Positions 4,218-56,628 of a stretch of 64,000 bases of DNA are shown piece after piece. Source of the stretch: Diadema antillarum (Eukaryota); contig NW_027272190.1 of NCBI RefSeq assembly GCF_040938485.1, positions 620,001 to 684,000 of the forward strand, written 5' to 3'. Under the pieces are notes generated by a model that did no database searches, was not told the origin of the DNA, and worked only from the letters and a program-made list of their open reading frames with translations. Position 1 is the first letter of the stretch. Each line of letters starts with the position of its first letter. Position numbers and translations under genes: made by a program.

Positions 4218-4595
4218 CTGTTGCAGTGAACGGTTTGCTCGCCCAACGAGTAGAAACAGAAAGGCACCTCACAGAGGTGACCAACATCCGTCTAGTCGGA
4301 GGTGTCCTTCCATGGGAGGGGCGCGTTGAGTTGCTCCACGAAGGGCAGTGGGGTACCGTCTGCGACGACCGTTGGGACATACTTGATGCTAGGGTGGCTT
4401 GCAGAATGCTCGGCTATCCCAATGCTCTCTCCTCACATTCTCAAGCATTTTTCGGGGAAGGCTCCGGTGTAATCCTCTTGGATGATCTCCAGTGCAACGG
4501 AGAGGAATTAGATCTGATATTAGAGTGCCCACATGACCCTGTTTTAGTACACAACTGTCAACACCACGAAGACGCCGGTGTAATTTGCGAACCTT
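4218..4595 (+). CDS. Exon: SRCR domain 1
   Basis: IRLVGG..EGRVE..GQWGTVCDDRWD..A.VACRMLG..LDDLQC.G.E..C..NC.H.EDAGVIC. Acceptor tgcag at 4217, donor gtaag at 4596, phase 1/1. Confidence 0.92.
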
Positions 4596-7500
4596 GTAAG
4601 TTTTTAACACCTGTTTCCCTCTCGATATGGTGCGTAGTGGTGTAACTCTGGTGTATATGAATAAATAAACCCCACATATTTATTATTATAACAGTGTAGT
4701 GCAAAATGTATAAACTTGCTGCAGAAAATATTTTGGCAATATCAAGACTGACATGAGTTACCTCAATTATCCAAAATGATGAAAAACGTATTTCCTCATA
4801 TCAGAACAAGAAAGACATGTCATCAGTAACATTTGTTGAAAGTTATTGTAAGGCATTCAAAAGGGCACAAAAGAAAGATATAATCATACTTTTGGAAAAA
4901 AACAACAACTGCGCAGTGTGCGTTTCATTCATCGAGCGTTGATTGTTAAAAGGCAAATGGGTAAACTCCTTAATGAAGAAATGTACTCCAATATTGTATC
5001 AATACCAAAAGAAAGAGAAAAATCCTGCAAAACAGAAAGGAAAATGATCAAAATCGAATAAGAAGTAAAGAAAGTATGATATTGAGAAATTTCCTTTTTT
5101 CTTTTTAGGAAAACACTTCTTGATCAGCTATTTTGAAAAGGCATACTCATATCGACAGGTTCATGACCACATCCTCTCACAATTTCTTGACTATATCATT
5201 CACATAAGTAGTAAAATCTCATAATCTACATTTCCGTACAAGTACGAAACCTGAGTTGAAAACAACCCAGAATAGATATCACCAGTGACTGACTGATGTA
5301 ACGTTGGAAAGGGAATATGTTTTACCTGTAACAGCAAAGAGGGTTTTTTTTTTTCGTCTTCATACCACACAGGAAAATCTGCGAGGGTATGGCATCGTCA
5401 ACTTGCTCATGTAAATATTTATGAGAACTGGTCAGGAAATGTTTTCCGGACAAGATATAAAGTTTTAGAATGTCCTATCTTCCTTATTTTCTTGTCCGGT
5501 TTTCCCCGTTATTTTTGTAACTTCCTGTATTGATTTTCCCCTCTTTCTTTTAGAGTTTGTTTATTGTGGCTTTCTCTTAAATAGTCCTATTACCTGAACA
5601 GCTTTTTATCGATCTTATTACAAACATCCTCACTTCAAATTCTCAGCAGTCTTTACCTCCCATATACATTTCCGTGTACAGGGACTGCAGACATGTCTCT
5701 GCGTTTGGGTGGTTCGGGACGGAACACCCCTTGGGAAGGCCGCTTAGAGATACAATTCGGCAGTGCATATATCGCTGTCTGCGACGATGGGTGGGATATC
5801 ATCGCTGCCGATGTGGCTTGTAGAGAGATGGGATTTGAAGGGGCGGAACTCGCTTGGACCAGATCGAAATTCTCCAACGGCTCCGAATTTTTCCCAATAG
5901 TACTGGACATCTTAAGCTGCGATGGAACAGAAAGCAGCATTCGGGACTGCGATCACCAGTTTGTCTCTGGAGTCAACTGCTCCCGTGATGAATACGCTGG
6001 AGTTTCATGCGTGTCAGGTAGCCTACCTGTAATAAGCTTCGATTTCTTGAGGACAAGAAGGAGATGACGAATGCACGGAAAAAAAAAAACACAAGGATGA
6101 TGATCGCTATTAGCACTGTTGTTAAAAACTTTAAACAAAACATGCATACGTTCAGCCAATTTAGTTACGCAAAAACTAGGATTATGTTTTACTCAGTGAA
6201 CGCTTTCAGTTGGTTGACTTTTCAGAGCGAATTTCTATTCATCTTAGTTTGAACTCCGGAGACGCTGTTTAAATGCTTATTCTTCTGTACAATTCAAAAC
6301 GATCTGCCTTTGGTTATAACCGAAGTTATAAAATGAAAAGGAACAAACGTTAACACTGATTTTGGTATGGGAATATGTTTTATCGGTATTTCCAGGCAAA
6401 CACTTCATATTGTGCACAATGCACCGCTGCACTCTTTCTTTCTTTTTCCCCCTCATTTACCTCCACTCAGTGAGTAGTGACTTGAATATTATATTTTCAC
6501 TATGTCGTATTGTTTAGACAATAATTTCTGAGGCTATTGTCTTCGTCAAGCGTCTGCTTATGATGATGGTCTCCTGCATTTTTGTTACATCAAAAGTTGC
6601 TAAATTCGTCTTTGAGCGACAGATAAACGGGATCCTATGTTTGCATAAATATATGCATAGAATAATGCATTTTTGTTCTCATTTTGTATTGTTTTACAAA
6701 AATGTTGGTCATTTGAATTAGGCCAAATCATTTATCTGTTTAAACTGTCAGATTCAAATTATACTGTGCTCATTTAGTTCGTTCCCTTGACTTTGGATTT
6801 CATAAATGAAAAACTAATTCAGAAATCAAATCAAATCAAATCAAATCAATTCAAATTCATTGTCTTAGTTATCTTTTGTCAATGGCGTTCATTAACGATT
6901 TCGTTATTATAAAAAAAAAATGCTAAATCCGTGTTCGTTATGAGCGAATTTTGTATCTTGATAAATAGACTTTAACGACGATAATTTTGGGACATAGATT
7001 GTTTCTTCTTCGTTATAAGCAAACTTCGTCTCAAAGAAATTTCATCATAATCGTGTTCGCTGGAGAGGAATGCACCGTACTCCTCCATCCATGTACATTC
7101 TTTAGACGCACACAACCATACTACACTGCCGGTTATCTCGTAAGAGTTTGGATGTCTATCCCTCAAAGTTAAATTTGACTGAAAGTTGGTGACAATTTGA
7201 TATGGAAAATGATTCTAAAGGGGATGTGTATGGATGGTGGACTTACCGTTTACTTATACAGGTGTAACATGATCACCCACTTCAGAATCACTTAACATAT
7301 TACCGATTTTCAGACATATTGTTTCTTTTTAATCCCACATACGCTCACATCACAACTCAGACATCCGCCTTGCTGGTGCAACAGTGCCAACAGAGGGCGT
7401 GGTGGAGGTCTTCTACGATGGGTCATGGGCCAGCGCATGCATAAGAAATTACTCTAGACATGGGATCGCCGACACCGTATGCAATGCAATCTATGACACT

Positions 7501-11210: not shown

Positions 11211-14200
11211 GAGAGGATTATACAGTGTTTAGACACAATGAAGCTGATAACGAAAACCATGCTCATTTCAGATCCCTGTCTAGCAGATGCGTGTCCAGCA
11301 CCATCCATCTGCGCAATGCCAGCATACACTGAGTCGACATCGGCACACTGCTTGTACCCCGACATCGAACCAGAGGCAATCTGTCGGGGCAGTCAAGGTA
11401 TCGAGTACACAGGGAAAAGGTCTTGGCCAACTGCAGTAAAATGGGGAAGGGGAGGGTTACAGATAAAGCACAAGATATAAAGAAGAGAAGATAAGTAATA
11501 ACAGAAAATAACAAAGAAACACAGAAGTTTGAAGATTTTTCCTCCGAGAGAGGAAAACAAAACTTACATAGGATTGTTGTCGATTGTCGATTAAAGGAAA
11601 GTATACTGCAGTAAAAAATCGCCATCCGTAACATACAAATTAATATCAATCAGAAGTTACATAGATTTGAAAAGACAGGTATTTTCCTAAAGTACAACTA
11701 CATTGCTCTCTCAGAATAATGCTGCACAGGAGGTGTACACCATGGCACATAGAGAGTTAATCTTCTACCTCGTCGCGCTCCGTGCAATGAATGGAACCAA
11801 AAACCCAAACAAAACAAAAACAAACAAACAAACAAACATCAAACAAACAAACAAACAGTGTGTAAAACTTTATAGCAACAACAGTGAAGAAGCTATCAGA
11901 TTGGAATTGACCATTCTCTAAAAACACTCTTTGTCGGCTTCCTACTCTTCCCCCCCTATTCTTCCCAACATTTTTTTTTTGTTCCAAACCTTTTTGTTGT
12001 TGTTTAGATGCCCATTTTTACCAATATTTCCGTTTTTTTTCTTTCCCAGGGGGCCCACACTTTACACGCATTTGTGTTTTCAGTGGTTCCCTCCGTTTTT
12101 TGCAAAGTGCATAAATAGATATTTCTCTTTATTTCATTTTCCTTCAGACCCATTATGATGTATCTTTACTGTAAGTTTACAATCATTGTTTACTCTGTTA
12201 AATACATATCGCTTTGTTAACATGTTCAATTCCTGAAGAAAGTTACATGTATTATCATGTTATTAATATTGTCGAAAAAAAGAAAAAAAATAATTGAATT
12301 GTTTTGGACATCGTCTATCTATGACTAAAATAAACTTCCAAAGCAGTTACTTTATCTATTATAAAGATATTGAAGTGAGGAGTGTGAAAAGGGTTTTTAA
12401 GAAATGAAAATGGGCTCTATGATACACCTGCTCACATTTTTCTACAAAAGACAGAGTGTTTAAGAATAAGTGTAAAAACACACTTTCCCATTCGGCTCAT
12501 GATCCCAAAACTTTACAATACTATAGAAGAATAATTGCTCTTCATAAAGTAAGTTATGAAAAACTCAAGATTGACAAGGTTGACTCATTTCACCTATTTT
12601 CAGTCCCCACACAAACTCAGCGATTGCGACTTTTTGTTAGTTATGTGATGCAAGGTCACATATTGAAAGAGAAAAAGAGAGAGAGAGGGGAATATCATTC
12701 ATGAGGTCATTCTCGTTGTTGTTTTGATAACGGCTGCTTGCTCTTTATTAGTAATTTGCTATTTCGTTTTCGTCTCTACTTGTTTGTTTGTTTGTTTTCT
12801 CACCCGCAGAGAATGGTAATAACTCAGCGGACTACGTTCAGTCAAGAATGACAGGTACCCTGCGACTACCTGACTTCGATGTTCCACCGTGGCAGGAATG
12901 CTCTTACCATCTCCTTCTTCCAATGGCCAGCCGCTTTGCTTTGTATTTTGAAGGCAATAGCACATTATTCATGAGGATAAGTATCAGCAGAGGCTACGAC
13001 TATTCTTCGTCTCAACCACAACAGACTATCATGGTCTACGGATCTTATCCCTGGACGATTTCGGTACACCATAGTAGCATATGGATGGAAGTGTTTTTCT
13101 CCGAAACCAAAATCGGCTCAGTGGACTTTGTAATGAACTATGTAGCAGGTAAGTGCAGCAAATCAAATGTGATTGGCAAACAAAACAAACAGAATGTCCA
13201 CAATGTTATAGAAACATATAGAGCATAATTATGATTAAAGAAGATGGACTTCTGACATTATACGCGGAATTGAATGAATTGAATTTTATAACTTTTTAAA
13301 TAAAACAAACAAACATGAAACTGGTTTACACGTCAAGTGTTTCAAAAGAAAAAAAAACCCAAAACATAACCATTAACGATTATTGTTTAGGGTGAGTGTA
13401 TGCTTGACTGTTTCGTCATTACTTTCATCTCCATCAATCAAAAAAAAAATCTAACATATACTGATTCTTTGCCCTTTCAGAGTGCATAGAAGAAGACAGC
13501 TTCGAAGGTAAGTTTAAGAAAGTGTCTAAATTCCGTTTCACATTGTATCCTTTGTCCAATAGAACACCAAAAAAACAACAACAAAAAACTTGAATATCAT
13601 ATAATTATATTATCAGGTAAGAAATAGCTATACTCAAACCAATAAAATATTACTCAATAGTAGAATATTTGTTCTATACATAAGCCCTATAAACTCAGCA
13701 TCTGCACGAATATACATGTACCTATACCTGTTGCTGGTTGTCGTAATTGAGGGCATTAGCTAAATCATTCTGAAAAAAAAAGAATTAATTATATTATTGT
13801 AATCTTATACTATGTCAATGTTATGAAATTTCAATATCTGATATATAGGGCTTGCTATGAGTGTAACGTGTTAGAACAACATCTAGGAAGTAAGTCTGCG
13901 ACACGAAAGCGTAATTTGATACGATTGATTAAACTCTTTATTGTGTAAATGGTACAGTGGCGTTTGATTTATACAATGCCAGGCAAATGATCATGGAATA
14001 AATTGTTGTTCCACAAACTCATGACAGAATCCTATTGTTTGAACATCAAAATCTTCCATCAGGAATTGGCAAGACAGAATTTGCCCACATCGTTTTAATC
14101 GTTTGCAGTGACTTGATTGTGTATCAGATGGAGACATTCGTTTTCCTCATTTGCAGTGACTTGATTGTGTTTTAGATGAAGACATCATTCGAAATCAGTC

Positions 14201-21641: not shown

Positions 21642-22793
21642 AATGCTTCCTTGCCGGTGTACAGATCACATACTCAAGTCTCGTCACCCTAACTCGGATT
21701 ATATCAAGAAAGTGCCTGGAAAGAGATGGTGTCAAGTCATTTCGCCTTCAGTATGAAGGCTCTGATCATGGGATAGTTGTAAGTCTCATTCAGAAGAATC
21801 ATATCCTAGTCTCCACATGTCATACTATAGAGATGTGTGGTCCCCAGTCGTTGTGGTGAAAAAAAGGCCTTCCACCTTTCACATTAAAATCCTATCCATG
21901 CGTTATGCATGTGTATACCTATTTTCTAACGAAATTTCTCGTGGTTAAAATCCGTTTATATCATGCCTTTCTCATGATAGAAGCATCTGACATCTGAGCT
22001 GCTTGGATTGTTAAAAAAAAACAAAGCAAAGAAAAAGAAAAAGAAAAACAAAACAATGTTTGAATTAGTTCTGCATCAATACCACTCTTGCCTGTATTCA
22101 ATTAGGTATATATTTGATATAAGCTTTCTATTATCATGTTTGAATTACCCCGAATATGAACATATATTTGCTTCGAACTTCCAAAGCCCAGTCAGCATTT
22201 ACCCACTAAAACGAAAAAGGTATTTGGGGTTAATTAAGCTGTTAATTATTTTGATGATTTCAATGATGCACTTCACTGATATAAGGGTACTTGTCTTGTG
22301 AGAAATGAGTTCTAATGCAGTGCCTCCGAGAGATGTGCAAAATTATCCACACGTCTTAAAAAAGGCAAATATTTTCCAACAACCTTGCAAAACAAAAGTG
22401 CCGTCCCCTATTAACTTTTTAGAACAAACGAACAAAAATTACAAGTAAATGGAATATTGTTAGCCAAGAAAATGTACATTGTTTCTCTGCCACTTAACTT
22501 TCCGAGATCGATTTGGACTATCGCAACACTTCATGGGCTATGCACGTCTTCGAGCAGCCGCTTACAGGTGTCAGGTCACTGAAGGTGTTTCCCACTGCAT
22601 GGATAACATCTCAAGAATGTGTCAAGCTTCAAACGTTTGGATGTCCGTTGGGTATGCCGCACTTCACATTCAAAAGTCTTAGTTTGTTACAGCAAGGCTT
22701 AATAAACATTTTCCCCGAACTTCGAAGTCTTCGTCATGCGTTTCCTGTAAGGTCTGGCCAGACATCTTTTGCGATGTGCGGTTAAAAGAACAA

Positions 22794-43500: not shown

Positions 43501-44740
43501 CACTACAATTACTTTCTATATGTACGGTAGATATTACGGGCGATAATGATAAAATGTATGACATCATGAGGCAAATCTCTCGTTTGAGGAAGCTACACCC
43601 CTGTAGACAATGCCAGTGTATATCTTGGCAATCAAGGACTTAAAAACCAAAGATATAAAACACCTGTTTCTTGACCCTGGCCTAATCTAAGCATCAGTGA
43701 CCGCCACAGGGAGGGGGGGGGGGGGGCACCCGCGAGAGGAGGAGATTGTTTTGGTTTTGGCATGGGCTATGTAGCTCCATGGTGCGTGTGTGTGTCGGCA
43801 AACTTCTACAATGCTCTCCTTCTTATTCCTGTATTTTCGTTATTTATGGGTCAAATTTTTTTCGTTCGAAATTCAAAACGGATGACTATGGAATTTCTCA
43901 ATAGAATATACAATCTCAAACTTGAGAAAGAATAGAGAAAATTGAGTGCACTTTGAATGGTCTGCCACAGGCAGATATCCTTATCATGCTCTTACTTAAT
44001 ATGACAGCTGTTGCAGTCATTAAACCCTGGCTTGGCCTCCAGGTTTGCCACGCCTGAGTAGAAAGTTATTTAGCCCTCCTACTCCCAACTCTCAAACGAG
44101 GAATCGTTAGGGGGGTATAGCACCCCATCAGCTTCGTTTGGTGATGGGGTCTCGCCTCAAACGGGGATTTGACGGCATGATACAGCGTTGACTGGATCAT
44201 GACAGGAAGGTTTAAATCATAAACTGTGAAATATCTTGATTCAGAGTGGACTTTTGCATTCAGCGTTTTTATTACATTATGGAGTGATGCATAATTAATT
44301 TTTTATATGATTGGAAAAAGAGTTAAGAATGGAGGGACTCCGTAATTTATTATCCATGTATTTTTGCGGATGGGATCTCGTGTAGGTTCCATCGCAAGCC
44401 ACCCTTGTCCCGCAGGATGGGATTCCTACGGGGTTAACTGCTACAGGTTCACATCCGTTGACGAAAAGTCCTGGAACGACGTTGAGAATCTCTGTGAAAC
44501 CAATATTCATGCTGGTTCTCATTTGGTCAGTATCCTTGACCAGGACGAGGCGAACTTCATACATCGAAAGCTCTTGTCGAAGTGGTCGGAGTTAGGAAAT
44601 GCAACCTACATTGGTGAGTACAGAACCTGCTGTGAGGGATTGAGATGTTCGCTTAATGCTCAAAAAAATTGTCTTTTCTTGCCTATAGAAATAAACTAAT
44701 CCTCCAATAGTGATAAGGACCGCGCTTACGGGGCCTGCAT

Positions 44741-52000: not shown

Positions 52001-54356
52001 AGAATCTTTCATCTGCCCAGAATACCACTTCAAATGCCCGGATTCTTACTGCATCCCGCTTAGAATGAGGTGTGACGGGGAGAATAATTGTCCAAATGGT
52101 GATGACGAGCTTCTGTGTCACGGTAGATGAAGCTTAATGCCATCTTATTGTGTTATTATTATCATTTTCTTTCAAATAGTTGCTATGATAGCATCTCTTG
52201 CTGAAGTGGTTACAGTCTTGGTAAAGACAATGATCATGCTTCTTAGTTGCCTGTGTTACGTGAAGTTGCTATTCTAAAAAGAGCTGTAAGCCTTGAAGCT
52301 TATATAAAATGGGACCTGGGCGCAGGAAGGGAGACCTACGGCACGTTACATGACCAATGCCAAAGATAAGCATTTGTAACGTTTATCAAAATTAATGAAT
52401 CTTGACTAGAGTAGTGTGCAATACGATCGATTGGCAAATTACCCTTCATCGACGTAAGTAAATACCACTTAATCAGAGTTTGGGTAAAAGCTGCGATAGA
52501 AATAATATTGACATATATCATACTCCGATGGGATTTGAAACTCTCTACCTGCTGGTAGCTTGATAGGCGTCATATCAACTAGATTATCGACCTTCGGCCC
52601 TGTAGTCTGCGCCGGTACTGGTCTCTTAAATCAGCGAGTACCACGCAATTTATCGGGTTGTTACTCCCGCCAGTAGGTTTTTTTCGATTCCGTTTTTTTT
52701 TTGTCTGTCTGTCTCTCTCGTTGCGCACAAGAACTCGAGAACCGAAGAATGGATTTTCACCAAATTTACAGGGTGTATTTAAACTGAAGTAAGAAAAACA
52801 AATAGATTTGTAGTCACGAGATCAAAAGTAATAGGTGTCATAAAGGGTATAAGATCAGCTTAATTCCAAAATAAGTCAGCAATGGATGATCAGATTTTCA
52901 CCAACTGTGTAGATGTCCCGAAACCTCCACATTTGTTTTGAAGATACCGTCTAAGAAATGGCAATGTTTTAATCATTGCTGATTGGCAAAGGTCTGCTCT
53001 TTCGGAGTGATGCTCCGGTTTATTCATTGACAAATTTATATATTGATCATGAAGAACAATTCTAAAGGAGAAAAAAAAAAATATTATATTTTGGGGTCAT
53101 GCGGCCGAAAGTCAATTACCATAGGCGTCATGAAGGACTTTAGTTTAATATCCAAATACTGGGAAAAATAATTGGATCACCAAACTTACAGGATGTGTTT
53201 ATAGTGAAATAAGAAAGAATCCTCAACTTCAAGGCCATCAATGCAAAGGTCAAAATGTCTTCGGGGTCATAAAAGACACAAGCTTAATTTCATAAAATAA
53301 AAAAACCTCAAGAACAGATAGTCAGATTTTCACCAAACATAAGACTGAGTTCATAATGAAGTGAGAAACAAGATAAAATGGGGTCATGAGATTAGAAGTC
53401 AAGAGACATAGGGTTATAAAGAACATATTACGCCTAATCAAATCAACCCCAACAAAATTTGTTTCCAGATTCTTATACTTTTGATTTTCATGATAAAAAA
53501 AGAAATACGTCGATAATTTGTTACTTAGGTAAGATCATTTTCTTTGCAGCAACTGGAATGGCTTTGAATATTTTGTATAGTGATTTTTATCATAGCTTAT
53601 TTGGGACGGCAATTCACGACACATGTTTGGAAATAAAAAGAAAACACTTGATTTCAACAATGGCAGTATCGGTCGCTTTTTATCACTATTCTTTTGATTT
53701 ATCATTTCATCTATGATATTACCATCTTTACTTTTCAATGTATATTTTCATCCTAATAGGGAAGTGTAGGTGCTTTGGAATAGAATGACAAAACAATCGT
53801 TGAATAGTATTATCACCACATTGCTGCTAGCAGAACGAGGTGATCGTTACATCATTGCATGCTGTAAAGCTGGTTTTCCTTTTGTTACTCCTATTCACCA
53901 AGAGAATAACTACGTTCACGTCTGTCCCCTTCGGACGTACAAATGTCGGGTCTCCAATCGCTGTCTGCCACCGCACGAAGTGTGCGATGGCGTCGCCCAC
54001 TGTCCGGAAGGCGACGACGAGCTGTTTTGCGGTGAGGATTATATCCTTTCATGTACAATGAGACAGAATAGATAATCATTTACTTCGATTGGAATGAAAA
54101 CTTATCATGAAAGCCTTATCTATCTTATATAACTTCAGACTCACAGTAAAACACCCGTAGCAGAAAACTCGGCCATGACTAGACAAGACCAAATACAGCC
54201 CAACATACAGAAGATGAGCACACGGTGCTGGGATGCACGTTAACCATACGAGTCCCACACAGGTCCTGACGAAGGTCCAATGACGGGCCGAAAGCTTGAC
54301 AAATAAAAGGGAGACTAAGATCGAGAGCAACGTCCCGCCTCAGTCCAATTTCTTTC

Positions 54357-54392: not shown

Positions 54393-56628
54393 CCTCAAAA
54401 CGAACATAAAGTAGCACACACTAATTTTGCGTGAAGACTGAAAATAAGTAAAATGGGTCAACCGAGCCGAACTTGACTTTTTCATATTTTCTGAAAGAGC
54501 GTGGGTTCTTTTACATTACTCTCTAAAAAAAATCGAGTGAAAATTTTCACTCTTAAAGGAGTGAATACAAAAAAGAGTGAATTTAGAGTGAAATATGAGT
54601 GAATTTCGAGTGAAAATGTTCATATTCACTCATTTTGGAGTGACCTCAGGGATCACTCGAAGATTTTGGAGTGATCCCTGACGTCACTCTAAAACGAGTG
54701 AAAATGAACATTTTCACTCAAAATTCACTCCAATTTCACTCTAAATTCACTCTTTTTTGTATTCACTCCTTTAAGAGTGAAAATTTTCACTCGATTTTTT
54801 TTAGAGAGTATCCTAAAATTTGGTATCATAAAACGGGCAGGAACGTGTGTTTTTTCAGCAGTTCGCAGCAGCATCTCGCACATTTTTGGTAGAATAGTGT
54901 GATTTGGTGTGTCTTTAGAATCCCTTTTTCATTTCTGAAAAATCTTGTCCACACTCTTCACTTTCAACTCTAATAACTTTTGAAAGGATAATGCTACTGC
55001 TTTGAAAGTTGGCATCAATTATGGACAGAATGTGTTAATGAGGCACGCTTAATTTCAATTTAATTTGATAATCCCTTCATTGTTGTTTTTCTGGTGGTTT
55101 ACGTCCTGTTTTTTGTCCCATTCATCGTTTGGTAAAGATTAAGCGCTTGAATAGACATTGTACTTCAGAGCCTCTTTTCTCAGTTCACACTTTTCCTGAG
55201 TTTGTGCTTTCTTTCCAATATTTAGATAGGTTAGGAGAGTAAATTTGATTTGAGTTATACATCATTTTAAAGCTTAAAGTCTGCTCTTTCAGAATATGGT
55301 CTTAACTAAAAATTCATGTCTGGCGACTTTTTGTTTGTTTTGAGGTGCAGGGTCACATTATAATTATAATACTATAATTAAATTATGTTTGTACACATAT
55401 AATCGAACAAATGAATATGTTTTCTTCATAATCATTACAATTAGGTACAGTACAACATTTTCTAGGTTCAAGGTTCAGTGTAAAAATGTTATATTAGACA
55501 ATTTGAAATGAATTTGTTAAGCTACATGTTAAACATTTATTTGATGTTATATGAAGATTGGCCAGCCTACTTTAGTTTTTAGTGCTCTGTGATGTGTGGT
55601 TGTGTGTGGGGTGTGAGGGTGTGGGTGTGTGTGTGTGTGTGTTAGTGTGTTTATGGTCTCCCTTTTTATGTAGGTTTATCTGTTGCCATTGTATATACGT
55701 TATGATTTTTCTGATATATACTTGCCATGTCGTAGTGTTAGTGTGTGAACTTACGTGGTACCTTGGTCCGCTGTCGGTGGTTTCAGTGACTGATCTGAAT
55801 GTTCACTCAACTGATTATTATGATGGGGAATGTCACTATACATCATTGGCGTTTGGCCTTTGTGCTGCTGAGTCCAACTTATTTGTACCTTGCATAGGGC
55901 CCCACTCACAAGCCTTGCTTCTTTCGGGGTCCTAAAAGCCATGTGAATTTTGTATTAGCGATTTGTGTTACCTTGTTATTTATGTTTGGTTTTTTAATAA
56001 ATTGAATTGAATTGAATTGAAATGAATTATCAAAAAAATGTGGCCAGAAGAGTTTTGAAGTACTCATTGTGTCCTGATCATGGAACTAATGTGAAAATGG
56101 TATGACACCCCCTCCCTCCCCCCCCCCCCCCCCACCCGCCCCCTCCCTGCAGTCATGGCACACACCTAGTAATACCGTGTCTTATAACATAACAGCCACT
56201 CAAATGTGCTGCCTAGGCCTATCATGTATTAATGAACTCTAGGTTCATCTTAAACATCATGAATCACAACGCACCGAACGAAGAATAATTAGTCAAATTG
56301 TACTTTTAAAGTATTCGTATCTATTTACCTAATAAAAGGAGGGTATTCTTATTAAAGAAAAAAGAAGTCAAAAAGCTTGGTTACTTCATATCCCTAATTC
56401 CCTTATTGAAATTCATTACCAAGGCTGATTTTTTTTTTTGGCAATGTGATATTAATAGCGACTAACTGCCATATTTCATGGGAGTTTTTTTTTTTTCTCT
56501 CCTAATGCTACCTCGACAGGAATCGACTCTATGTGCCCAGCTGAATGTGAATGTGTTGGACAAAACGTGAAGTGTAATTTCATAAAGTCGTCCGGAGTCA
56601 TTCAGTTCCCTTTGGACATGAAGCGACT
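4218..56628 (+). CDS. Multi-exon gene (36 coding exons found, continues 3' of 56628): giant mosaic receptor ectodomain SRCRx3-EGF-like-CUB-F5/8x3-CTL-EGF-CTL-CUBx3-CTL-LDLax7-LRRNT; GRL101-like / type C2 LGR (relaxin-receptor-like GPCR) predicted
   Basis: Every exon listed below has an AG acceptor and GT donor, phases match across all 35 introns, and the joined 6,385 nt has no stop. CTL + LDLa array (including a CIYD..GCRD.SH repeat) + LRRNT is typical of GRL101-like receptors. The 7TM region was not seen. Confidence 0.85.
5682..6017 (+). CDS. Exon: SRCR domain 2
   Basis: LRLGG..EGRLEI..AVCDDGWD..A.VACREMGF..LDILSCDGTE..CDH..NC..EYAGVSC. Phase 1/1; alternative in-frame acceptor at 5690. Confidence 0.9.
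7361..7693 (+). CDS. Exon: divergent SRCR domain 3
   Basis: DIRLAG..EGVVEVFYDGSWASAC..TVC..DIRC..NSLAGC..C..GIRC. ctcag acceptor, gtaaag donor, phase 1/1. Confidence 0.88.
7980..9820 (+). mobile_element. Decayed Tx1/L1-clade LINE ORF2 (RT C-terminal half to end)
   Basis: QGDPLSP*LF, LQYADDT, GG.KMID, LWNNPLIK, WFQYKILNRIL and a CTFC...E zinc-knuckle-like motif, spread over frameshifts and stops. Confidence 0.88.
9919..10490. mobile_element. Kolobok-like non-autonomous element with long TIRs and TTAA TSD
   Basis: TTAA|aggacaggttcaccttcataaacataagg ... ccttatgtttatgaaggtgaacttgtcct|TTAA; inverted arms extend about 200 bp. The superfamily call is inferred from the TTAA TSD and RR termini. Confidence 0.8.
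10588..10803. repeat. Tandem duplication, ~108-bp unit x2
   Basis: aatgtcactttctgaata...gaactgaaacacatttt occurs at 10588 and 10696. Confidence 0.85.
11272..11397 (+). CDS. Exon: Cys-rich / EGF-like module (DPCLADACPAPSIC...HCLYP...AICRGSQ)
   Basis: tttcag acceptor; donor AAG|gtatcg gives the phase 1 required by the next exon; 5 Cys. Confidence 0.7.
12545..12662 (-). repeat. Terminal fragment related to MITE family A
   Basis: Reverse complement resembles the left end atgtgacc...aagtcgca...actgaaaata.gtgaaat. Confidence 0.55.
12810..13148 (+). CDS. Exon: divergent CUB-like domain
   Basis: Open frame ..GTLRLPDF..PPWQECSYHL..F.LYF..IWMEVFF..DFVMNYVA. ccgcag acceptor, gtaagt donor, phase 1/1. 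The domain call comes from pattern only. Confidence 0.72.
13481..13507 (+). CDS. 27-nt microexon (ECIEEDSFE)
   Basis: Strong ccctttcag acceptor and AG|gtaagt donor, phase 1/1, open frame. Confidence 0.7.
14102..14190. repeat. Short tandem duplication (~48-bp period)
   Basis: tttgcagtgacttgattgtgt..agatg.agaca occurs twice. Confidence 0.8.
14395..14573 (+). CDS. Exon: F5/8 type C (discoidin) domain 1, N-terminal part
   Basis: PLGME..IADEEI.ASS..APHNARLYGASAW.P...DPYLQ. Phase 1/0. Confidence 0.88.
14962..17087 (-). mobile_element. Decayed pogo/Tigger-like (Tc1/mariner superfamily) DNA transposon with nested insertions
   Basis: TA|ggggagacccaggagagttgag ... ctcaagtctcctgggtctcccc|TA. The minus strand at ~16460-16617 encodes YKRTSDRG..LQRGAKLV..SVRAAARAFGVDRMTLKRY, like an HTH_psq/CENP-B N-terminus. 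Confidence 0.8.
15486..15703. mobile_element. Small element with subterminal inverted repeats and a (CCCTAA)-like core; Helentron/HINE-like
   Basis: gacatatgctccggc ... ggcggagcatatgtc IR flanks ccctaccctaaccctaaccctaatcc. Confidence 0.55.
17300..18245 (+). mobile_element. 3' fragment of L2/Crack-like LINE
   Basis: LYSTLLLPYLNNGILAWGN..QKKALRI..GIFMYK..HNYPT*; similar to the 3031-3342 product; ends near aataaaaaaa. Confidence 0.82.
18384..18539 (+). CDS. Exon: F5/8 domain 1, middle part
   Basis: INLQ..NVIGLIMQGG..YWVKSFEVEYG. ctaag acceptor, AAG|gtaagt donor, phase 0/0. Confidence 0.88.
19108..19249 (+). CDS. Exon: F5/8 domain 1, C-terminal part
   Basis: VFTGNTN..F...V.TDRLRIRP...ALRLEILG. 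Phase 0/1. Confidence 0.88.
20274..20389 (+). CDS. Exon: divergent F5/8 domain 2, N-terminal part
   Basis: ACDYPL..W.IRL..STYIQ. ttttcag acceptor, CAG|gtgaga donor, phase 1/0. Confidence 0.75.
21327..21575 (+). mobile_element. ~250-bp MITE family B (TGAAGAGTTTG TIR), copy 1
   Basis: tgaagagtttgtttgcaaaaaccgataagtcca ... tggacttatcggattttgcgaacaaactcttca. Confidence 0.82.
21665..21778 (+). CDS. Exon: F5/8 domain 2, middle part
   Basis: ITYSSLVTLTRIISR..GVKSFRLQY. gtacag acceptor, gtaagt donor, phase 0/0. Confidence 0.8.
22507..22651 (+). CDS. Exon: F5/8 domain 2, C-terminal part
   Basis: HVFEQPLTGVRSLKVFPTAW..CVKLQTFGCP. Phase 0/1. Confidence 0.8.
23362..23508 (+). CDS. Exon: divergent F5/8 domain 3, N-terminal part
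   Basis: Open 147-nt frame (..CSGC..LSLSRIG..GCFFP). ttgcag acceptor, gtaaaa donor, phase 1/1. Confidence 0.7.
23940..24145 (+). CDS. Exon: F5/8 domain 3, middle part
   Basis: EQWIQVSFSQL..FKIAY. Long pyrimidine tract with aag acceptor, gtaagt donor, phase 1/0. Confidence 0.8.
24606..24741 (+). CDS. Exon: F5/8 domain 3, C-terminal part
   Basis: IHLPQFTTTSVRIIP..W..RVSFAFGG. Phase 0/1, gtaaga donor. Confidence 0.78.
25157..25849 (+). mobile_element. 693-bp MITE family A, copy 2
   Basis: Same TIRs and near-identical interior to 1516-2208. Confidence 0.88.
26176..27316. mobile_element. ~1.1-kb non-autonomous TIR element with TA flanks and internal ATTCAATTT/AAATTGAAT subrepeats
   Basis: 36-bp perfect TIR ggttttcccggccaatttcgcacttttgtcagtcca at both ends. 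Confidence 0.82.
27464..27677 (+). CDS. Exon: C-type lectin domain 1, N-terminal part
   Basis: KCP..FNNQCYRL..ECQ..GSHLAYL..VRIGL. Phase 1/2. Confidence 0.88.
28064..28263. mobile_element. 200-bp element with perfect 23-bp TIRs enclosing a tRNA-like sequence
   Basis: acagtgaaaactttgagcaaaga (28064-28086) and its exact reverse complement (28241-28263). Confidence 0.78.
28092..28165 (-). pseudogene. tRNA-like / SINE-head sequence (loop CT-AGT-AA, Thr-derived), defective anticodon stem
   Basis: Minus strand reads TAGCTCAGTCGGTAGAGC (A box/D arm) and TCGGGTTCGAATCCCGA (B box/T arm). The acceptor stem pairs 6/7; the anticodon stem has 2 mismatches. Confidence 0.7.
28597..29208. mobile_element. 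Possible TTAA-flanked (Kolobok-like) non-autonomous element
   Basis: TTAA|agccc ... gggct|TTAA; only a very short terminal match. Confidence 0.3.
29952..30112 (+). CDS. Exon: C-type lectin domain 1, C-terminal part
   Basis: WYWLDN..QCG..C..NC..ALCQ. Phase 2/1. Confidence 0.85.
30540..30662 (+). CDS. Exon: calcium-binding EGF domain
   Basis: DINEC..CSHNCVNTAGSFYCSCPHGY..C, matching the cbEGF consensus. Phase 1/1. Confidence 0.93.
31384..31556 (+). CDS. Exon: divergent C-type lectin-like domain 2, N-terminal part
   Basis: C..GRCMY..SFDSVSADC..GGRIA. Phase 1/0. Confidence 0.75.
31603..31642. repeat. (TA)n microsatellite (others at ~40503-40565 and ~54358-54390)
   Basis: Direct read. Confidence 0.95.
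31661..32354 (-). mobile_element. Diverged full-length member of MITE family A in reverse orientation
   Basis: Ends atgtgaacctgcatcacagaac / gttttgtggtgcacggtcagat; interior matches the reverse complement of family A blocks. Confidence 0.7.
32693..32822 (+). CDS. Exon: C-type lectin-like domain 2, C-terminal part
   Basis: LWWTG..ECQAF..W.PCDENFSYAC. Phase 0/1, gttagt donor. Confidence 0.78.
33105..33758 (+). repeat. ~650-bp interspersed repeat family C, copy 1
   Basis: Reverse complement of 43562-44179 across its whole length. Confidence 0.88.
34474..34627 (+). CDS. Exon: CUB-like domain A, N-terminal part
   Basis: Open frame, ttctag acceptor, AG|gtacag donor. Phase 1/2 fits the neighbouring exons. 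Confidence 0.65.
35000..35489. repeat. Tandem duplication (~245-bp unit x2) spanning a (GT)n tract and the 5' junction of the Tx1 fragment
   Basis: ggttgcgattaaatac...gaaaagcaa at 35000-35247 and 35248-35489. Confidence 0.88.
35073..38540 (+). mobile_element. 5'-truncated decayed Tx1/L1-clade LINE (ORF2 RT to end at ~37715, then G/T-rich 3'UTR)
   Basis: KAPGNDGF..FY, KNYRPITLLNVDYKI.SK, RQGDPLSPYLF, GGL...., zinc-knuckle-like region and KW terminus across several frameshifts. The 3' limit is approximate. Confidence 0.87.
39097..39317 (+). CDS. Exon: CUB-like domain A, C-terminal part
   Basis: L.F..CVDYVRVID..ICG..IRFQLLY. Phase 2/1, gtaagt donor. Confidence 0.83.
39878..40050 (+). CDS. Exon: CUB domain B, N-terminal part
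   Basis: GCG..GTVETSPFPSEF..CSLDV.VP.G..VQIE. Phase 1/0. Confidence 0.87.
40062..40403. repeat. Tandem duplication, 171-bp unit x2, just downstream of the donor at 40050
   Basis: atacattttgtttccataacattgc...gttatttagc repeated almost identically. Confidence 0.92.
41279..41465 (+). CDS. Exon: CUB domain B, C-terminal part
   Basis: SCQDRVYL..LAC..SSEVTMR..GFRARI. Phase 0/1. Confidence 0.85.
42495..42911 (+). CDS. Exon: CUB domain C
   Basis: C..PGIIASPYYP..W.L.AP..IRIVF..C..FECG..V.ITL..FRAEY. Phase 1/1. Confidence 0.88.
43562..44179 (-). repeat. Interspersed repeat family C, copy 2 (inverted relative to copy 1)
   Basis: See 33105-33758. Confidence 0.88.
44386..44613 (+). CDS. Exon: C-type lectin domain 3, N-terminal part
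   Basis: CPAGW..YGVNCYRF..SW..C..SHLVSI..E..FI..TYIG. Phase 1/1. Confidence 0.92.
44742..44779. repeat. (CA)n microsatellite (others at ~45405-45440, ~48070-48097 as GT, ~48993-49055, ~35047-35071)
   Basis: Direct read. Confidence 0.95.
45295..45379 (+). CDS. Exon: C-type lectin domain 3, middle part
   Basis: GL..FRWTDGSPMAYTDW. Phase 1/2. Confidence 0.9.
45445..45940. repeat. Degenerate array of (A)CCCTAAATGTAATA-like units
   Basis: More than 15 variants of ccctaaatgtaa / taatacattttaac at irregular 20-40 bp spacing. Confidence 0.72.
46008..46186 (+). CDS. Exon: C-type lectin domain 3, C-terminal part (QPD, WHD motifs)
   Basis: QPDG..ERC..WHDIPC..VICK. Phase 2/1. Confidence 0.92.
46280..46500 (+). 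repeat. Interspersed repeat related to ~90-270 and ~49710-49850
   Basis: Shared blocks tctcag.cattt.aaaacc.atttt.atcaaataaacgtt and ttttcatatttcaaagga.g.tt.tcattatctc. Confidence 0.5.
46999..47187 (+). CDS. Exon: linker + LDLa repeat 1
   Basis: C..CRSGECI..CDGNADCFDESDEVDC. Phase 1/1. Confidence 0.92.
47774..47887 (+). CDS. Exon: LDLa repeat 2
   Basis: CPDGFFNC.STCI..CDFKEDCQDGSDENDC. Phase 1/1. Confidence 0.93.
48839..48970 (+). CDS. Exon: LDLa repeat 3
   Basis: CPPTHFSC..CI..VCNLIIDC..DEENC. Phase 1/1. Confidence 0.9.
49858..50104 (-). mobile_element. MITE family B, copy 2 (inverted), TA TSD
   Basis: TA|tgaagagtttgttcgc ... gcgaacaaactcttca|TA; interior is the reverse complement of 21327-21575. 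Confidence 0.85.
50327..50443 (+). CDS. Exon: LDLa repeat 4 (4-Cys variant)
   Basis: FQCYSGTWIP..RCDGLFDC..EDEMGC. Phase 1/1. Confidence 0.9.
50917..51066 (+). CDS. Exon: LDLa repeat 5 (GRL101-type insert)
   Basis: CEDDQFTCLNGAC..LCIYDVDYLGYIKGCRDVSHM..DC. Phase 1/1. Confidence 0.9.
51537..51645. repeat. Exact tandem duplication, 56-bp period
   Basis: tgactcttaatagatattaaactttcttaatcaaatcactggggattttcagt occurs twice. Confidence 0.92.
52003..52122 (+). CDS. Exon: LDLa repeat 6
   Basis: CPEYHFKCPDSYCIP..RCDG..NCPNGDDELLC. Phase 1/1. Confidence 0.93.
52660..53440 (+). mobile_element. HINE/Helentron-like non-autonomous repeat(s) with diverged tandem core
   Basis: ttactcccgcc..gtctgtctgtc start, recurring gattttcaccaaa/ggggtcat core units, and a ggtctg..gagtg..ct end motif near 53010. 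The family assignment comes from recalled structure. Confidence 0.4.
53903..54031 (+). CDS. Exon: LDLa repeat 7
   Basis: CP..YKC..RCLP..VCDG..HCPEGDDELFC. Phase 1/1. Confidence 0.92.
54392..55358 (+). mobile_element. MITE family A, copy 3 (left end replaced by (TA)n, carries nested palindrome)
   Basis: Colinear with copies 1 and 2 except for a 290-bp insert; right TIR ...gaggtgcagggtcacat. Confidence 0.87.
54519..54808. mobile_element. 290-bp near-perfect palindromic (foldback) MITE with TA TSD
   Basis: TA|ctctctaaaaaaaatcgagtg ... cactcgatttttttagagag|TA; ~140-bp arms, 10-nt loop, GAGTGAA subrepeats. The insertion site is empty in the other family A copies. Confidence 0.92.
55430..56020 (+). 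mobile_element. Probable LINE 3'UTR remnant with AATAAA + (ATTGA)n tail
   Basis: Ends ...taataaattgaattgaattgaattgaaatg; no coding part seen. Confidence 0.4.
56520..56628 (+). CDS. Exon: LRR N-terminal cap (LRRNT)
   Basis: CPAECECVGQNVKC..FP.DMKRL. It ends in phase 2 within a Leu codon, as is typical before LRR exons; gtaagt donor. Confidence 0.88.

What the first reader, a model, noticed from the sequence alone, without database searches (positions are those of the whole stretch)
4218..56628. Giant pattern-recognition-like ectodomain (SRCR, F5/8, CTL, CUB, EGF) fused to a GRL101/type C2 LGR-like LDLa-LRR module
Seen: 36 phase-compatible exons form one stop-free frame of about 2,128 codons. 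Domain order is 3 SRCR, Cys-rich module, CUB, 3 F5/8, CTL, cbEGF, CTL, 3 CUB, CTL, 7 LDLa, LRRNT. Known: Lymnaea GRL101 and type C2 LGRs have LDLa arrays + LRRs + 7TM, and SRCR, CTL and F5/8 are common microbe- or glycan-binding modules in invertebrate immunity. Inference: this is a single GPCR carrying about 1,800 aa of adhesion/lectin modules upstream of a relaxin-receptor-like core, which could link glycan or microbe sensing to G-protein signalling. I do not recall this full architecture being described, and automated annotation would probably split it into several genes.
Basis: partly seen in the sequence, partly recalled or inferred. Interest (0 to 1): 0.85.

Follow-up and report, generated by a model that had tools for sequence, protein, structure and literature searches.

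The report
Giant mosaic-headed relaxin-type receptor gene
This stretch of sea-urchin DNA encodes the 2,100-residue outer part of one very large hormone-receptor-type G-protein-coupled receptor, whose head is built from immune- and adhesion-type modules; relatives exist across echinoderms, gene-prediction pipelines break them into pieces, and I found no paper describing them.

Summary
I rebuilt a chain of 35 AG/GT-bounded, phase-compatible exons on the + strand (4218-56628) with 2,118 codons and no stop.

- **Domains confirmed:** Pfam finds 3 SRCR, a cbEGF and 7 LDLa on single exons. Home-made HMMs on the joined protein find a strong F5/8, two CUB and a strong C-type lectin.
- **Domains weaker:** the remaining F5/8, CTL and CUB copies are degenerate and rest on position and homology. 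The first "CUB" and the Cys-rich module are unverified.
- **Homology:** residues 518-2118 align in one gap-poor HSP with Lytechinus pictus LOC129265611 (E=0). Residues 1046-2118 align with S. purpuratus LOC105438462. Both continue after the LRRNT exon into LRRs and a rhodopsin-class 7TM that is closest to human RXFP1.
- **Synteny:** in S. purpuratus and Diadema setosum the same exon order (SRCR, F5/8 ... LDLa, LRR, 7TM) lies on one strand. Annotation cuts it into two and three gene models, in S. purpuratus inside a lectin domain.
- **Paralogues:** Kringle-headed versions with the same core are single 2,500-2,900-aa RefSeq models in starfish, brittle star and urchins.

The single-gene GPCR reading is therefore well supported, but only indirectly. 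The LRR/7TM exons lie beyond the window and I have no transcripts. The pattern-recognition function is untested.

The parts
4218..4595 (+). Exon 1 of the model: SRCR domain 1 (one exon, phase 1-1). No start codon, so the signal-peptide exon is missing.
   Evidence: Pfam SRCR 104.9 bits, E=3e-30; AG/GT and phase
5682..6017 (+). Exon 2: SRCR domain 2
   Evidence: Pfam SRCR 78.3 bits
7361..7693 (+). Exon 3: SRCR domain 3 (divergent)
   Evidence: Pfam SRCR 26.9 bits against cut-off 26.1; own HMM 13 bits
11272..11397 (+). Exon 4: short Cys-rich linker module, with no recognised family
   Evidence: Open, phase 1-1, good acceptor; no Pfam hit
12810..13148 (+). Exon 5: beta-rich module. It may be a degenerate CUB, but this is unverified.
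   Evidence: Strong splice sites; no Pfam hit; faint repeated similarity to CUB repeats; AF2 model all-beta but pLDDT 45
14395..14573 (+). Exon 6: F5/8 type C (discoidin) domain 1, first third
   Evidence: tblastn 55% identity to P0170 1-47; joined domain 81 bits with own F5/8 HMM
18384..18539 (+). Exon 7: F5/8 domain 1, middle
   Evidence: tblastn 59% identity to P0170 44-92
19108..19249 (+). Exon 8: F5/8 domain 1, last third
   Evidence: tblastn 49% identity to P0170 100-144
20274..20389 (+). Exon 9: degenerate F5/8 domain 2, first third
   Evidence: Strong acceptor and CAG|GTGAGA donor, phase fits; no tblastn HSP of its own; lies within the single blastp HSP to P0170, with no gap of 10 or more residues in the MAFFT alignment
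21665..21778 (+). Exon 10: degenerate F5/8 domain 2, middle
   Evidence: tblastn 52% identity to P0170 188-218; GTAAGT donor
22507..22651 (+). Exon 11: degenerate F5/8 domain 2, last third
   Evidence: tblastn to P0170 231-335; own HMM 9 bits over domain 2
23362..23508 (+). Exon 12: degenerate F5/8 domain 3, first part
   Evidence: tblastn to P0170 301-332
23940..24145 (+). Exon 13: degenerate F5/8 domain 3, middle
   Evidence: tblastn 36% identity to P0170 323-389
24606..24741 (+). Exon 14: degenerate F5/8 domain 3, end
   Evidence: Splice sites and phase; colinear with P0170
27464..27677 (+). Exon 15: C-type lectin-like domain 1, first half. The S. purpuratus annotation is split at the equivalent exon.
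   Evidence: tblastn to P0170 448-518; homologous exon at L001 9752-9979
29952..30112 (+). Exon 16: C-type lectin-like domain 1, second half (WYWLD ... CQA)
   Evidence: tblastn to P0170 and to the N-terminus of P0142; phase 2/1 join to exon 15
30540..30662 (+). Exon 17: calcium-binding EGF domain
   Evidence: Pfam EGF_CA 38.4 bits
31384..31556 (+). Exon 18: short C-type lectin-like domain 2, first half (weak)
   Evidence: tblastn to P0142 98-153 and P0170 638-667
32693..32822 (+). Exon 19: C-type lectin-like domain 2, second half
   Evidence: Coding score and phase; colinear with P0142 154-196
34474..34627 (+). Exon 20: first of three tandem CUB domains, first half (weak)
   Evidence: tblastn 44% identity to P0142 197-253
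39097..39317 (+). Exon 21: first tandem CUB, second half
   Evidence: tblastn 43% identity to P0012 and 36% to P0142
39878..40050 (+). Exon 22: second tandem CUB, first half
   Evidence: tblastn; own CUB HMM 14 bits over model residues 1353-1459
41279..41465 (+). Exon 23: second tandem CUB, second half
   Evidence: tblastn 48% identity to P0142 391-451
42495..42911 (+). Exon 24: third tandem CUB (whole domain in one exon)
   Evidence: Pfam CUB 20.4 bits, cut-off 21.4; phmmer found the family with it
44386..44613 (+). Exon 25: C-type lectin domain 3, first part
   Evidence: Own CTL HMM 135 bits on the joined domain; tblastn 42-46% identity
45295..45379 (+). Exon 26: C-type lectin domain 3, middle
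   Evidence: tblastn 81% identity to P0142 671-696
46008..46186 (+). Exon 27: C-type lectin domain 3, end (QPDG ... WHD). Its last codons form half of the R-E-R-R site.
   Evidence: tblastn 50% identity; alignments
46999..47187 (+). Exon 28: linker plus LDLa 1
   Evidence: Pfam Ldl_recept_a 40.9 bits
47774..47887 (+). Exon 29: LDLa 2
   Evidence: Pfam 32.5 bits
48839..48970 (+). Exon 30: LDLa 3
   Evidence: Pfam 28.1 bits
50327..50443 (+). Exon 31: LDLa 4
   Evidence: Pfam 24.6 bits
50917..51066 (+). Exon 32: LDLa 5. It is atypical or truncated, as in all relatives.
   Evidence: Pfam 19.7 bits, partial; 55% identity to P0142; same weak fifth LDLa in the paralogues
52003..52122 (+). Exon 33: LDLa 6
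   Evidence: Pfam 41 bits
53903..54031 (+). Exon 34: LDLa 7, the module next to the LRR domain. An alternative in-phase acceptor lies at 53831.
   Evidence: Pfam 23.9 bits; 60% identity to P0142 1038-1077; acceptors compared
56520..56628 (+). Exon 35: LRR N-terminal cap (C-P-x-E-C-E-C ... C-N-F). This is the last exon of the gene inside the window; it ends in phase 2 at the same point as the relatives' exon.
   Evidence: tblastn 40% identity to P0142 1078-1112 and P0170 1587-1621; alignment; Pfam LRRNT is the only hit, 13.5 bits, sub-threshold

Best explanation
Window 4218-56628 (+) is the ectodomain-coding part of one very large gene for a leucine-rich-repeat G-protein-coupled receptor of the relaxin/GRL101 kind (type C2 LGR). 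It holds 35 exons and at least 2,118 residues.

**Shown here.**
- The head reads SRCR x3, a Cys-rich linker, an unassigned beta module, F5/8 x3 (one good, two decayed), CTL, cbEGF, a short CTL, CUB x3 and CTL.
- It is followed by seven LDLa modules and an LRR N-cap.
- The gene sits in a well-supported sea-urchin subfamily with S. purpuratus LOC105438462 (plus its upstream SRCR/F5/8 neighbour model), L. pictus LOC129265611 and a three-model locus in D. setosum.
- It shares the core F5/8x3-CTL-EGF-x-CUBx3-CTL-LDLax7-LRR-7TM with Kringle-headed paralogues across echinoderms.

**Inferred from the relatives.**
- After exon 35 come the LRR exons, a hinge and a rhodopsin-class 7TM. They lie beyond the window's 3' end, past an intron that holds a LINE element.
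- A short signal-peptide exon lies upstream of 4218.

**Inferred mechanism.**
- The modular head binds large ligands such as matrix, glycan, lipid or cell-surface molecules.
- The signal passes through the LDLa array and LRR domain to an RXFP1-like 7TM, probably Gs/cAMP, as in relaxin receptors where the LDLa module and LRR domain are needed for activation.
- A dibasic R-x-K/R-R site at the CTL#3/LDLa1 exon junction is shared with the two camarodont relatives. It may let a furin-type protease separate the roughly 1,770-residue head from the LDLa-LRR-7TM part.
For: **Gene model.** All exons are AG/GT-bounded and phase-compatible, with no stop.

**Domains.** Pfam on single exons; own HMMs on the joined protein.

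**Homology.**
- Model 518-2118 aligns to P0170 1-1620 in one HSP at 38.7% identity, E=0.
- Model 1046-2118 aligns to P0142 34-1111 at 42% identity.
- There is no gap of 10 or more residues over the overlap with P0170 in the three-way MAFFT alignment.

**Relatives carry the receptor part.** P0142 and P0170 carry LRR_8 and 7tm_1 after the LRRNT. Their LRR-7TM part is closest to RXFP1: 7TMW at 217 bits, LHCGR 132, LGR4 82.

**Trees.** The window model falls in a clade with Spur, Lpic and Dset copies at 99% and 100% SH-aLRT.

**Synteny and split models.**
- S. purpuratus: a 1,153-aa SRCR, SRCR, F5/8 model ends 19 bp before the P0142 gene on the same strand.
- That boundary falls in the CTL#1a exon. 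The stop used is the TAA of its donor GC|GTAAGA, and P0142 begins with a 7-codon mini exon and then the second half of the lectin domain.
- D. setosum: three same-strand models (SRCR, SRCR, F5/8 | CUB | LDLa, LRR, 7tm_1), with homologous unannotated exons in the gaps between them.
- P0170 and P0142 both start at an internal Met inside a domain and have no signal peptide.

**Paralogues.** Nine Kringle-headed single models of 2,565-2,880 aa in seven species share the core.

**Dibasic site.** Window RERR, Spur RKRR, Lpic RKRR.
Against: - No LRR or 7TM exon lies in 56629-64000, so the receptor half is inferred, not seen.
- I have no transcript evidence of any kind.
- No convincing signal-peptide exon was found in 1-4217. 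The only candidate is 3518-3566, 16 codons, and it is weak.
- No single public protein model joins SRCR to 7TM.
- No protein more than 43% identical to the CUB exon over its full length exists in the 1.84-billion representative library, so this copy seems unannotated and its expression is unknown.
- Identity to every relative is only about 40-50%, and the branching order inside the clade is unresolved. One-to-one orthology is therefore not shown.
- The dibasic site is not evident in the D. setosum copy.
- Several head domains are degenerate or unassigned.
- Ligand, coupling and cleavage are all inference.
Confidence: 0.8

Rival explanations
1. Two or three separate neighbouring genes, as public annotation draws them in other urchins. 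One would be a secreted SRCR-F5/8(-lectin) protein; the other a separate CUB-CTL-LDLa-LRR-7TM receptor, possibly with a third CUB-only gene between them.
For: S. purpuratus RefSeq has two models and D. setosum has three. Phase 1-1 module exons are compatible with almost any neighbour, so phase compatibility alone proves little. There are no transcripts here.
Against: - The S. purpuratus boundary cuts a C-type lectin domain in two. It uses a stop codon that is part of the donor consensus, and the next model starts 20 bp on with a 7-codon exon.
- The L. pictus model splices across that point and joins F5/8 to 7TM.
- The D. setosum gaps hold homologous, unannotated CTL and LDLa exons.
- The downstream models lack signal peptides and start inside domains.
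- The window holds no credible internal first exon.
- The Kringle-headed paralogues are single models with the same core.
Confidence: 0.1
2. This copy is a truncated or decaying paralogue. It would be an ectodomain-only (secreted) gene, or a pseudogene that has lost its LRR-7TM part, for example after the LINE insertion downstream of exon 35.
For: The LRR/7TM exons are absent from the last 7.4 kb. A LINE (endonuclease plus RT, minus strand) sits at about 58.8-61.6 kb. No annotated protein matches this copy closely. It is only 40-50% identical to the other copies, which may mean an extra, faster-evolving paralogue.
Against: All 35 exons are open, with intact canonical splice sites and conserved cysteines. 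Exon 35 ends at a good donor in the same phase and at the same residue as in S. purpuratus. Introns of 2.5-4.5 kb with LINE fragments occur elsewhere inside the gene, so 7 kb without an exon is not unusual.
Confidence: 0.08
3. Same gene structure but a different job. It would be a peptide-hormone receptor (for insulin-, relaxin- or IGF-like ligands, as proposed for GRL101), with the big head serving only as a co-receptor or localisation device rather than as an immune pattern-recognition sensor.
For: The 7TM and LRR parts are closest to RXFP1. Veenstra 2021 (PMC8286064) proposes GRL101 as an IGF receptor and reports echinoderm insulin-like peptides without an assigned LGR. The LDLa x7 array and the CTL next to it are conserved from crinoid to spider, whereas the outer head modules are swapped between paralogues.
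Against: Nothing here tests ligand binding. Type C2 LGRs are still orphan receptors (PMC8660763). Many paralogues with different heads would be odd for a small set of hormones.
Confidence: 0.3

Closest known systems
Lymnaea GRL101 and other type C2 LGRs (Tensen 1994; Van Hiel 2012, as cited in PMC8286064 and PMC8660763)
   Same: Both have an array of several LDLa modules followed by an LRR domain and, in the relatives, a rhodopsin-class 7TM. UniRef names the S. purpuratus relative 'G-protein coupled receptor GRL101'.
   Different: GRL101-type receptors are described with LDLa and LRR only. This gene adds about 1,770 residues of SRCR, F5/8, CTL, EGF and CUB modules in front.
Human relaxin receptor RXFP1 (PDB 7TMW), a type C1 LGR
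   Same: It is the best solved-structure match of the relatives' LRR-7TM part (217 bits, covering both LRR and 7TM). An LDLa module sits directly N-terminal of the LRR domain.
   Different: RXFP1 has one LDLa and no further head modules. The ligand and coupling of the urchin receptor are unknown.
Kringle-headed giant LGR-like proteins of echinoderms: A. planci LOC110983669 and LOC110983144, P. miniata LOC119737135, L. variegatus LOC121413255 and others (all 'uncharacterized protein')
   Same: The core is the same and colinear: F5/8 x3, CTL, cbEGF, CUB x3, CTL, LDLa x7 (fifth one atypical), LRR, 7tm_1.
   Different: Their N-terminus is Kringle x2 plus a PAN-like stretch rather than SRCR x3 plus a Cys-rich and a beta module. 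They are 25-45% identical and form separate clades.
Adhesion GPCRs (7tm_2) with SRCR, Kringle, CTL, CUB or LDLa heads in amphioxus and sponge (PMC2246102, PMC4302439)
   Same: Both have a long mosaic extracellular head of adhesion- and immune-type modules on a 7TM receptor. The head may be cut away from the membrane part.
   Different: The relatives here have a rhodopsin-class 7tm_1 with LRRs and no GAIN/GPS domain. Any cleavage would be by a furin-type site, not autoproteolysis.
Amphioxus LOC144862181 (P0193)
   Same: CUB, LDLa arrays, SRCR, CTL, LRR and 7tm_1 all lie in one predicted protein. Its SRCR is 46% identical to SRCR1 of the window by tblastn.
   Different: The module order differs (the SRCR is embedded between LDLa arrays), there is no F5/8, and a kinase-like tail suggests a fused model.

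Membership tests
Type C LGR (relaxin/GRL101-type leucine-rich-repeat GPCR) | At least one LDLa module in the ectodomain (definition quoted in PMC8660763) | tested here: met
   Seven LDLa exons; Pfam 19.7-41 bits, five above the 24.1-bit cut-off
Type C2 LGR (GRL101 type) | More than one LDLa module | tested here: met
   Seven in the window. Relatives and paralogues have the same seven-fold array.
Type C LGR | Leucine-rich-repeat domain between the LDLa modules and the membrane | tested here: inconclusive
   Only the LRR N-cap exon lies in the window (sub-threshold Pfam LRRNT 13.5 bits; alignment). LRR_8 follows at that position in P0142 and P0170. No LRR exon lies in 56629-64000.
Type C LGR | Rhodopsin-class (7tm_1) seven-helix domain | not testable with these tools
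   It lies outside the window. It is present in P0142, P0170 and in the downstream D. setosum model.
Type C2 LGR (GRL101 type) | 7TM groups with GRL101 rather than with RXFP (C1) or type A/B LGRs in a tree | not tested
   No reference C1, A or B sequences could be obtained. The only indirect evidence is that RXFP1 is the best PDB match of the relatives and the automatic UniRef name 'GRL101'.
Echinoid SRCR-headed giant LGR subfamily (Spur LOC105438462 plus its upstream model, Lpic LOC129265611, Dset P0012 locus) | Colinear homology over the ectodomain and clade membership | tested here: met
   One HSP of 1,600 residues; no gap of 10 or more residues; 99% and 100% SH-aLRT clades
Echinoid SRCR-headed giant LGR subfamily | SRCR and F5/8 exons upstream of the CUB-CTL-LDLa-LRR-7TM exons on one strand | tested here: met
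   Window; S. purpuratus L001; D. setosum L003
Adhesion GPCR (class B2) | 7tm_2 domain preceded by a GAIN/GPS autoproteolysis domain | tested here: not met
   The relatives carry 7tm_1 and no GPS or 7tm_2 hit. No GPS-like exon lies in the window.
Functional C-type lectin (Ca-dependent glycan binding), for CTL#3 | EPN/QPD triplet plus WND motif | tested here: inconclusive
   QPDG is present and conserved, but WND is replaced by WHD in the window and in nearly all relatives.

The most novel reading that the evidence does not exclude
Echinoderms, and perhaps bilaterians more widely, carry a whole undescribed clade of rhodopsin-class, relaxin-receptor-like GPCRs that behave like adhesion GPCRs. 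A giant head of interchangeable modules (SRCR or Kringle, F5/8, lectin, CUB) would be cut off at a furin-type site yet stay coupled to an LDLa-LRR-7TM unit. Binding or pulling by matrix, glycan or microbial ligands would then be turned into cAMP signalling. This window's gene would be the SRCR-headed, possibly immune-facing member.
Probability: 0.15. Interest if true: 0.85.

Novelty: new variant of a known kind. Interest (0 to 1): 0.6.

Why it matters
Type C2 LGRs (GRL101 type) are still orphan receptors and are described as LDLa-plus-LRR receptors.

A recent survey of ambulacrarian LGRs reported one GRL101 orthologue per species and no further LGRs (PMC8286064).

The data here show several paralogous lineages of 2,200-2,900-residue receptors in urchins, starfish and a brittle star. 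They have an RXFP1-like LRR-7TM part behind a conserved CUB-CTL-LDLa x7 unit and swappable heads. Smaller versions of the same core occur in a crinoid, a spider and amphioxus.

If these are expressed as single proteins, they are a rhodopsin-class counterpart of adhesion GPCRs. They are also candidates both for unassigned echinoderm insulin/relaxin-type peptides and for matrix, glycan or microbe sensing.

There is a practical point as well. Gene predictors cut these loci into two or three false genes, which hides the family from domain-architecture surveys.

Tried and rejected
- **Automatic exon chaining.** Two dynamic-programming runs recovered the main exons but added spurious short ones and missed three. 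I replaced them with a hand-curated chain checked against relatives.
- **Pfam on single exons of split domains** (F5/8, CTL, most CUB) gave nothing, so I built HMMs from homologue segments instead.
- **Joined protein.** It could not be given to Pfam, the structure tools or the large searches, because it has no reference.
- **The look-up of encoding contigs for P0170:** not on record.
- **The search for homologous proteins with P0170:1-1000**, meant to fetch the S. purpuratus upstream SRCR/F5/8 product, returned nothing. I never obtained that protein's sequence.
- **Search for LRR motifs and for homology to the relatives' LRR/7TM in 56-64 kb:** only noise.
- **Signal-peptide exon scans:** one weak candidate upstream and none credible between blocks.
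- **AF2 of exon 5 without an alignment** was too poor for a fold search.
- **D. antillarum paralogue locus L002** does not overlap the window, so it gave no downstream sequence.
- **Species.** The genome is said to be Diadema antillarum only in an earlier agent's note. I did not verify this, and the D. setosum copy is only about 40-50% identical.
- **Literature.** Whittaker et al. 2006 (echinoderm adhesome) and Van Hiel et al. 2012 were not held, so prior mention there cannot be excluded.
Full report
**What is in the window.** The window is AT-rich metazoan DNA (35-39% GC up to 56 kb, rising to 44-46% in the last 8 kb) with no N. Stop-free stretches on the + strand carry obvious cysteine-rich module sequences. 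I therefore curated the chain by hand against relatives.

The result is 35 exons from 4218 to 56628, every one with an AG acceptor and a GT donor. Phases are compatible throughout, giving 6,358 nt or 2,118 codons with no stop. The only ambiguity I saw is the acceptor of the LDLa7 exon (53903 or 53831, both in phase).

**Domains.** Pfam on single exons confirms:
- three SRCR (104.9, 78.3 and 26.9 bits);
- a calcium-binding EGF (38.4 bits);
- seven LDLa (19.7-41 bits);
- a CUB just under threshold (20.4 against 21.4 bits).

Domains split over two or three exons cannot be scored that way, and the joined protein has no reference for the tools. I therefore built HMMs from segments that Pfam delimits in homologues and ran them on the joined model:
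- F5/8#1 scores 81 bits;
- two CUBs score 14-15 bits;
- CTL#3 scores 135 bits;
- F5/8#2 and #3 score only 9 and 6 bits;
- CTL#1, CTL#2 and the first tandem CUB are marginal or missed.

These weak copies sit exactly where the starfish paralogue P0129 has Pfam-significant F5/8 x3, CTL and CUB x3, so I read them as decayed copies. Neither has a Pfam hit even at E<=10. The latter shows faint repeated similarity to cubilin-type CUBs, and its AF2 model is all-beta but poor (pLDDT 45). For the last exon, LRRNT is the only Pfam family returned, at 13.5 bits. The exon aligns residue for residue with the C-P-x-E-C-x-C ... C cap of the relatives.

**Relatives.** A phmmer search of the single-exon CUB against 1.84 billion representatives was swamped by multi-CUB proteins but also gave a few full-length single matches. 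Pfam on those showed two things:
- Acanthaster planci proteins of 2,767 and 2,565 residues with Kringle x2, F5/8 x3, cbEGF, CUB x3, CTL x2, LDLa, LRR and 7tm_1;
- a S. purpuratus protein (cluster member P0142, XP_030854276, 1,734 aa) with CUB, CTL, LDLa, LRR and 7tm_1.

Searching onward gave single Kringle-headed models of 2,565-2,880 aa in seven species: A. planci, Patiria miniata, Asterias amurensis, Amphiura filiformis, Diadema setosum, Lytechinus variegatus and L. pictus. All are named "uncharacterized protein". Several shorter or differently headed paralogues also turned up. L. pictus LOC129265611 (P0170, 2,237 aa) is 70% identical to P0142.

The joined window model aligns with P0170 in one HSP (model 518-2118 to P0170 1-1620, 38.7% identity, 1,130 bits). 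It aligns with P0142 over model 1046-2118 at 42% identity. A three-way MAFFT alignment with P0170 and P0142 shows no gap of 10 or more residues over the overlap with P0170, so no exon is missing or extra relative to that model. Trees of the CTL#3-LDLa-LRRNT region and of the CUB region place the window model in a clade with the S. purpuratus, L. pictus and D. setosum (P0012) copies, at 99% and 100% SH-aLRT. All Kringle-headed and other paralogues fall outside.

**Does it go on into a receptor?** Not inside the window. Neither an LRR motif scan nor permissive tblastn with the relatives' LRR/7TM parts finds anything in 56629-64000. That stretch holds a LINE element on the minus strand, with endonuclease and reverse transcriptase. 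In the relatives, however, the exon homologous to 56520-56628 is followed by LRR_8 and 7tm_1. The window's exon ends at a good donor in the same phase and at the same residue. The relatives' LRR-7TM part matches human RXFP1 far better than the glycoprotein-hormone receptors or LGR4 (217 against 132 and 82 bits). By the structural definition quoted in PMC8660763, seven LDLa modules make this a type C2 LGR. I could not run a 7TM tree with reference sequences.

**One gene or several?** Public models are fragmentary in an informative way.
- P0170 begins at a Met inside F5/8#1. P0142 begins in the second half of CTL#1. P0012 begins in the second half of CTL#2. None has a signal peptide.
- At the S. 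purpuratus locus (L001), a 1,153-aa model with SRCR, SRCR and F5/8 ends 19 bp before the P0142 gene on the same strand.
- The boundary lies in the exon homologous to 27464-27677.
- The upstream model stops at a TAA that is part of that exon's donor (GC|GTAAGA). P0142 starts 20 bp further on with a 7-codon exon.
- The L. pictus model splices across exactly this point (..INSA|IRWLDG).
- At the D. setosum locus (L003), three same-strand models read SRCR, SRCR, F5/8 (819 aa), then CUB (445 aa), then LDLa, LRR, 7tm_1 (691 aa).
- tblastn with my model finds the missing CTL#1, CTL#3 and LDLa1-5 exons in the unannotated gaps, in order.
- A D. antillarum paralogue shows the same pattern: an F5/8-only model just upstream of a CUB-LDLa-LRR-7TM model.
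- The window holds no credible start-plus-signal exon between the blocks.

Taken together, this makes one transcription unit from SRCR1 to the 7TM much the most likely reading. It remains an inference until cDNA spans the junctions.

**What remains open.**
- The 5' end: only a weak 16-codon candidate first exon exists, at 3518-3566.
- Whether this copy is expressed: no protein more than 43% identical to its CUB exon over the exon's full length exists in the representative library.
- Its exact relation to the other copies. An earlier agent's note names the genome as Diadema antillarum (unchecked). Yet the D. setosum copy is only about 40-50% identical and the order inside the clade is unresolved. 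This may be a second, older paralogue of the SRCR-headed type.

**How it probably works.**
- Shown: a mosaic head in front of a conserved unit of CUB, CTL, LDLa x7 and LRRNT.
- Shown: that unit (CUB-CTL-LDLa x7-LRR-7TM) is also present in a crinoid and a spider. An amphioxus protein combines CUB, SRCR, CTL, LDLa, LRR and 7tm_1.
- Shown: the lectin next to the LDLa array keeps QPDG and a W-H-D in place of WND from spider to urchin.
- Inferred: the variable outer modules (SRCR or Kringle, F5/8, CUB) bind large ligands. The conserved inner unit passes the event to an RXFP1-like 7TM, by analogy with relaxin receptors, in which the LDLa module and LRR domain are required for activation (PMC4837482 abstract).
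- Inferred: a dibasic R-x-K/R-R site sits at the CTL#3/LDLa1 exon junction in the window (RERR) and in S. purpuratus and L. pictus (RKRR), but is not evident in D. setosum. It could allow furin-type cleavage between head and receptor unit.

**Comparison with the literature.** Papers on GRL101 and type C2 LGRs describe LDLa plus LRR ectodomains only (PMC8286064, PMC4079206, PMC11863921, PMC6267866, PMC8660763). PMC8286064 states that only one orthologue of each type C LGR was found per ambulacrarian species, despite searches for more. SRCR, Kringle, CTL, CUB and LDLa heads have been reported on adhesion-class (7tm_2) GPCRs of amphioxus and sponge (PMC2246102, PMC4302439), not on rhodopsin-class LGRs. 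Searches for the domain combination and for the locus names found nothing. Two likely sources, Whittaker 2006 and Van Hiel 2012, are not held.

**Verdict.** This is a new variant of a known kind: a type C2 LGR with a giant mosaic head. The family is already visible as unnamed or fragmented predictions in public proteomes but, as far as I could find, has not been described.

Noticed in passing
window 46183-47006 (exon junction 46186|46999): The dibasic R-E-R-R formed across the exon junction is matched by R-K-R-R at the same alignment position in S. purpuratus and L. pictus. It is absent from other paralogues and not evident in the D. setosum copy.
   Followed up: partly
window 35280-37600 (+), 58800-61600 (-), 9130-9513 (+): Non-LTR retrotransposon fragments lie inside introns. 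RVT_1 is at 35280-35768. Exo_endo_phos plus RVT_1 ORFs lie on the minus strand at 59453-61594. zf-RVT is at 9130-9513. GC rises to 44-46% over the last one.
   Followed up: partly
window 40062-40408; 35000-35490; 10588-10805: Three intronic tandem duplications: 171 bp x2 at 97% identity just after exon 22, 242 bp x2 at the 5' edge of the LINE, and 108 bp x2.
   Followed up: no
window 3518-3566 (+): This is the only ATG-plus-hydrophobic-plus-donor candidate for a first exon in phase with exon 1 (MTTCSVLQFLLLCPGR). It is short and weak.
   Followed up: partly
L001 9700-10060 (S. purpuratus GCA_000002235.4, AAGJ06000005.1): The RefSeq models look mis-split. The upstream SRCR/F5/8 model ends at a TAA inside the donor GTAAGA of a lectin exon. 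LOC105438462 starts with a 7-codon exon 20 bp downstream.
   Followed up: yes
L003 1-27965 (D. setosum GCA_964275005.2, OZ188186.1): Three adjacent models (819, 445 and 691 aa) together cover only part of a colinear giant receptor locus. CTL#1, CTL#3 and LDLa1-5 exons lie unannotated between them.
   Followed up: yes
L002 1764-35927 (D. antillarum GCA_040938485.1, JBFRCO010001033.1): In a paralogue, a 253-aa F5/8-only model sits directly upstream of the CUB-LDLa-LRR-7TM model P0174. This is probably another split giant receptor.
   Followed up: no
window model residues about 1700-1750 (exons 26-27, 45295-46186): The lectin domain next to the LDLa array keeps QPDG, and W-H-D instead of WND. This is conserved from the spider Parasteatoda to echinoderms.
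   Followed up: partly
It is only 35-78% identical per exon. Either this is a second SRCR-headed paralogue or the species label needs checking.
   Followed up: partly
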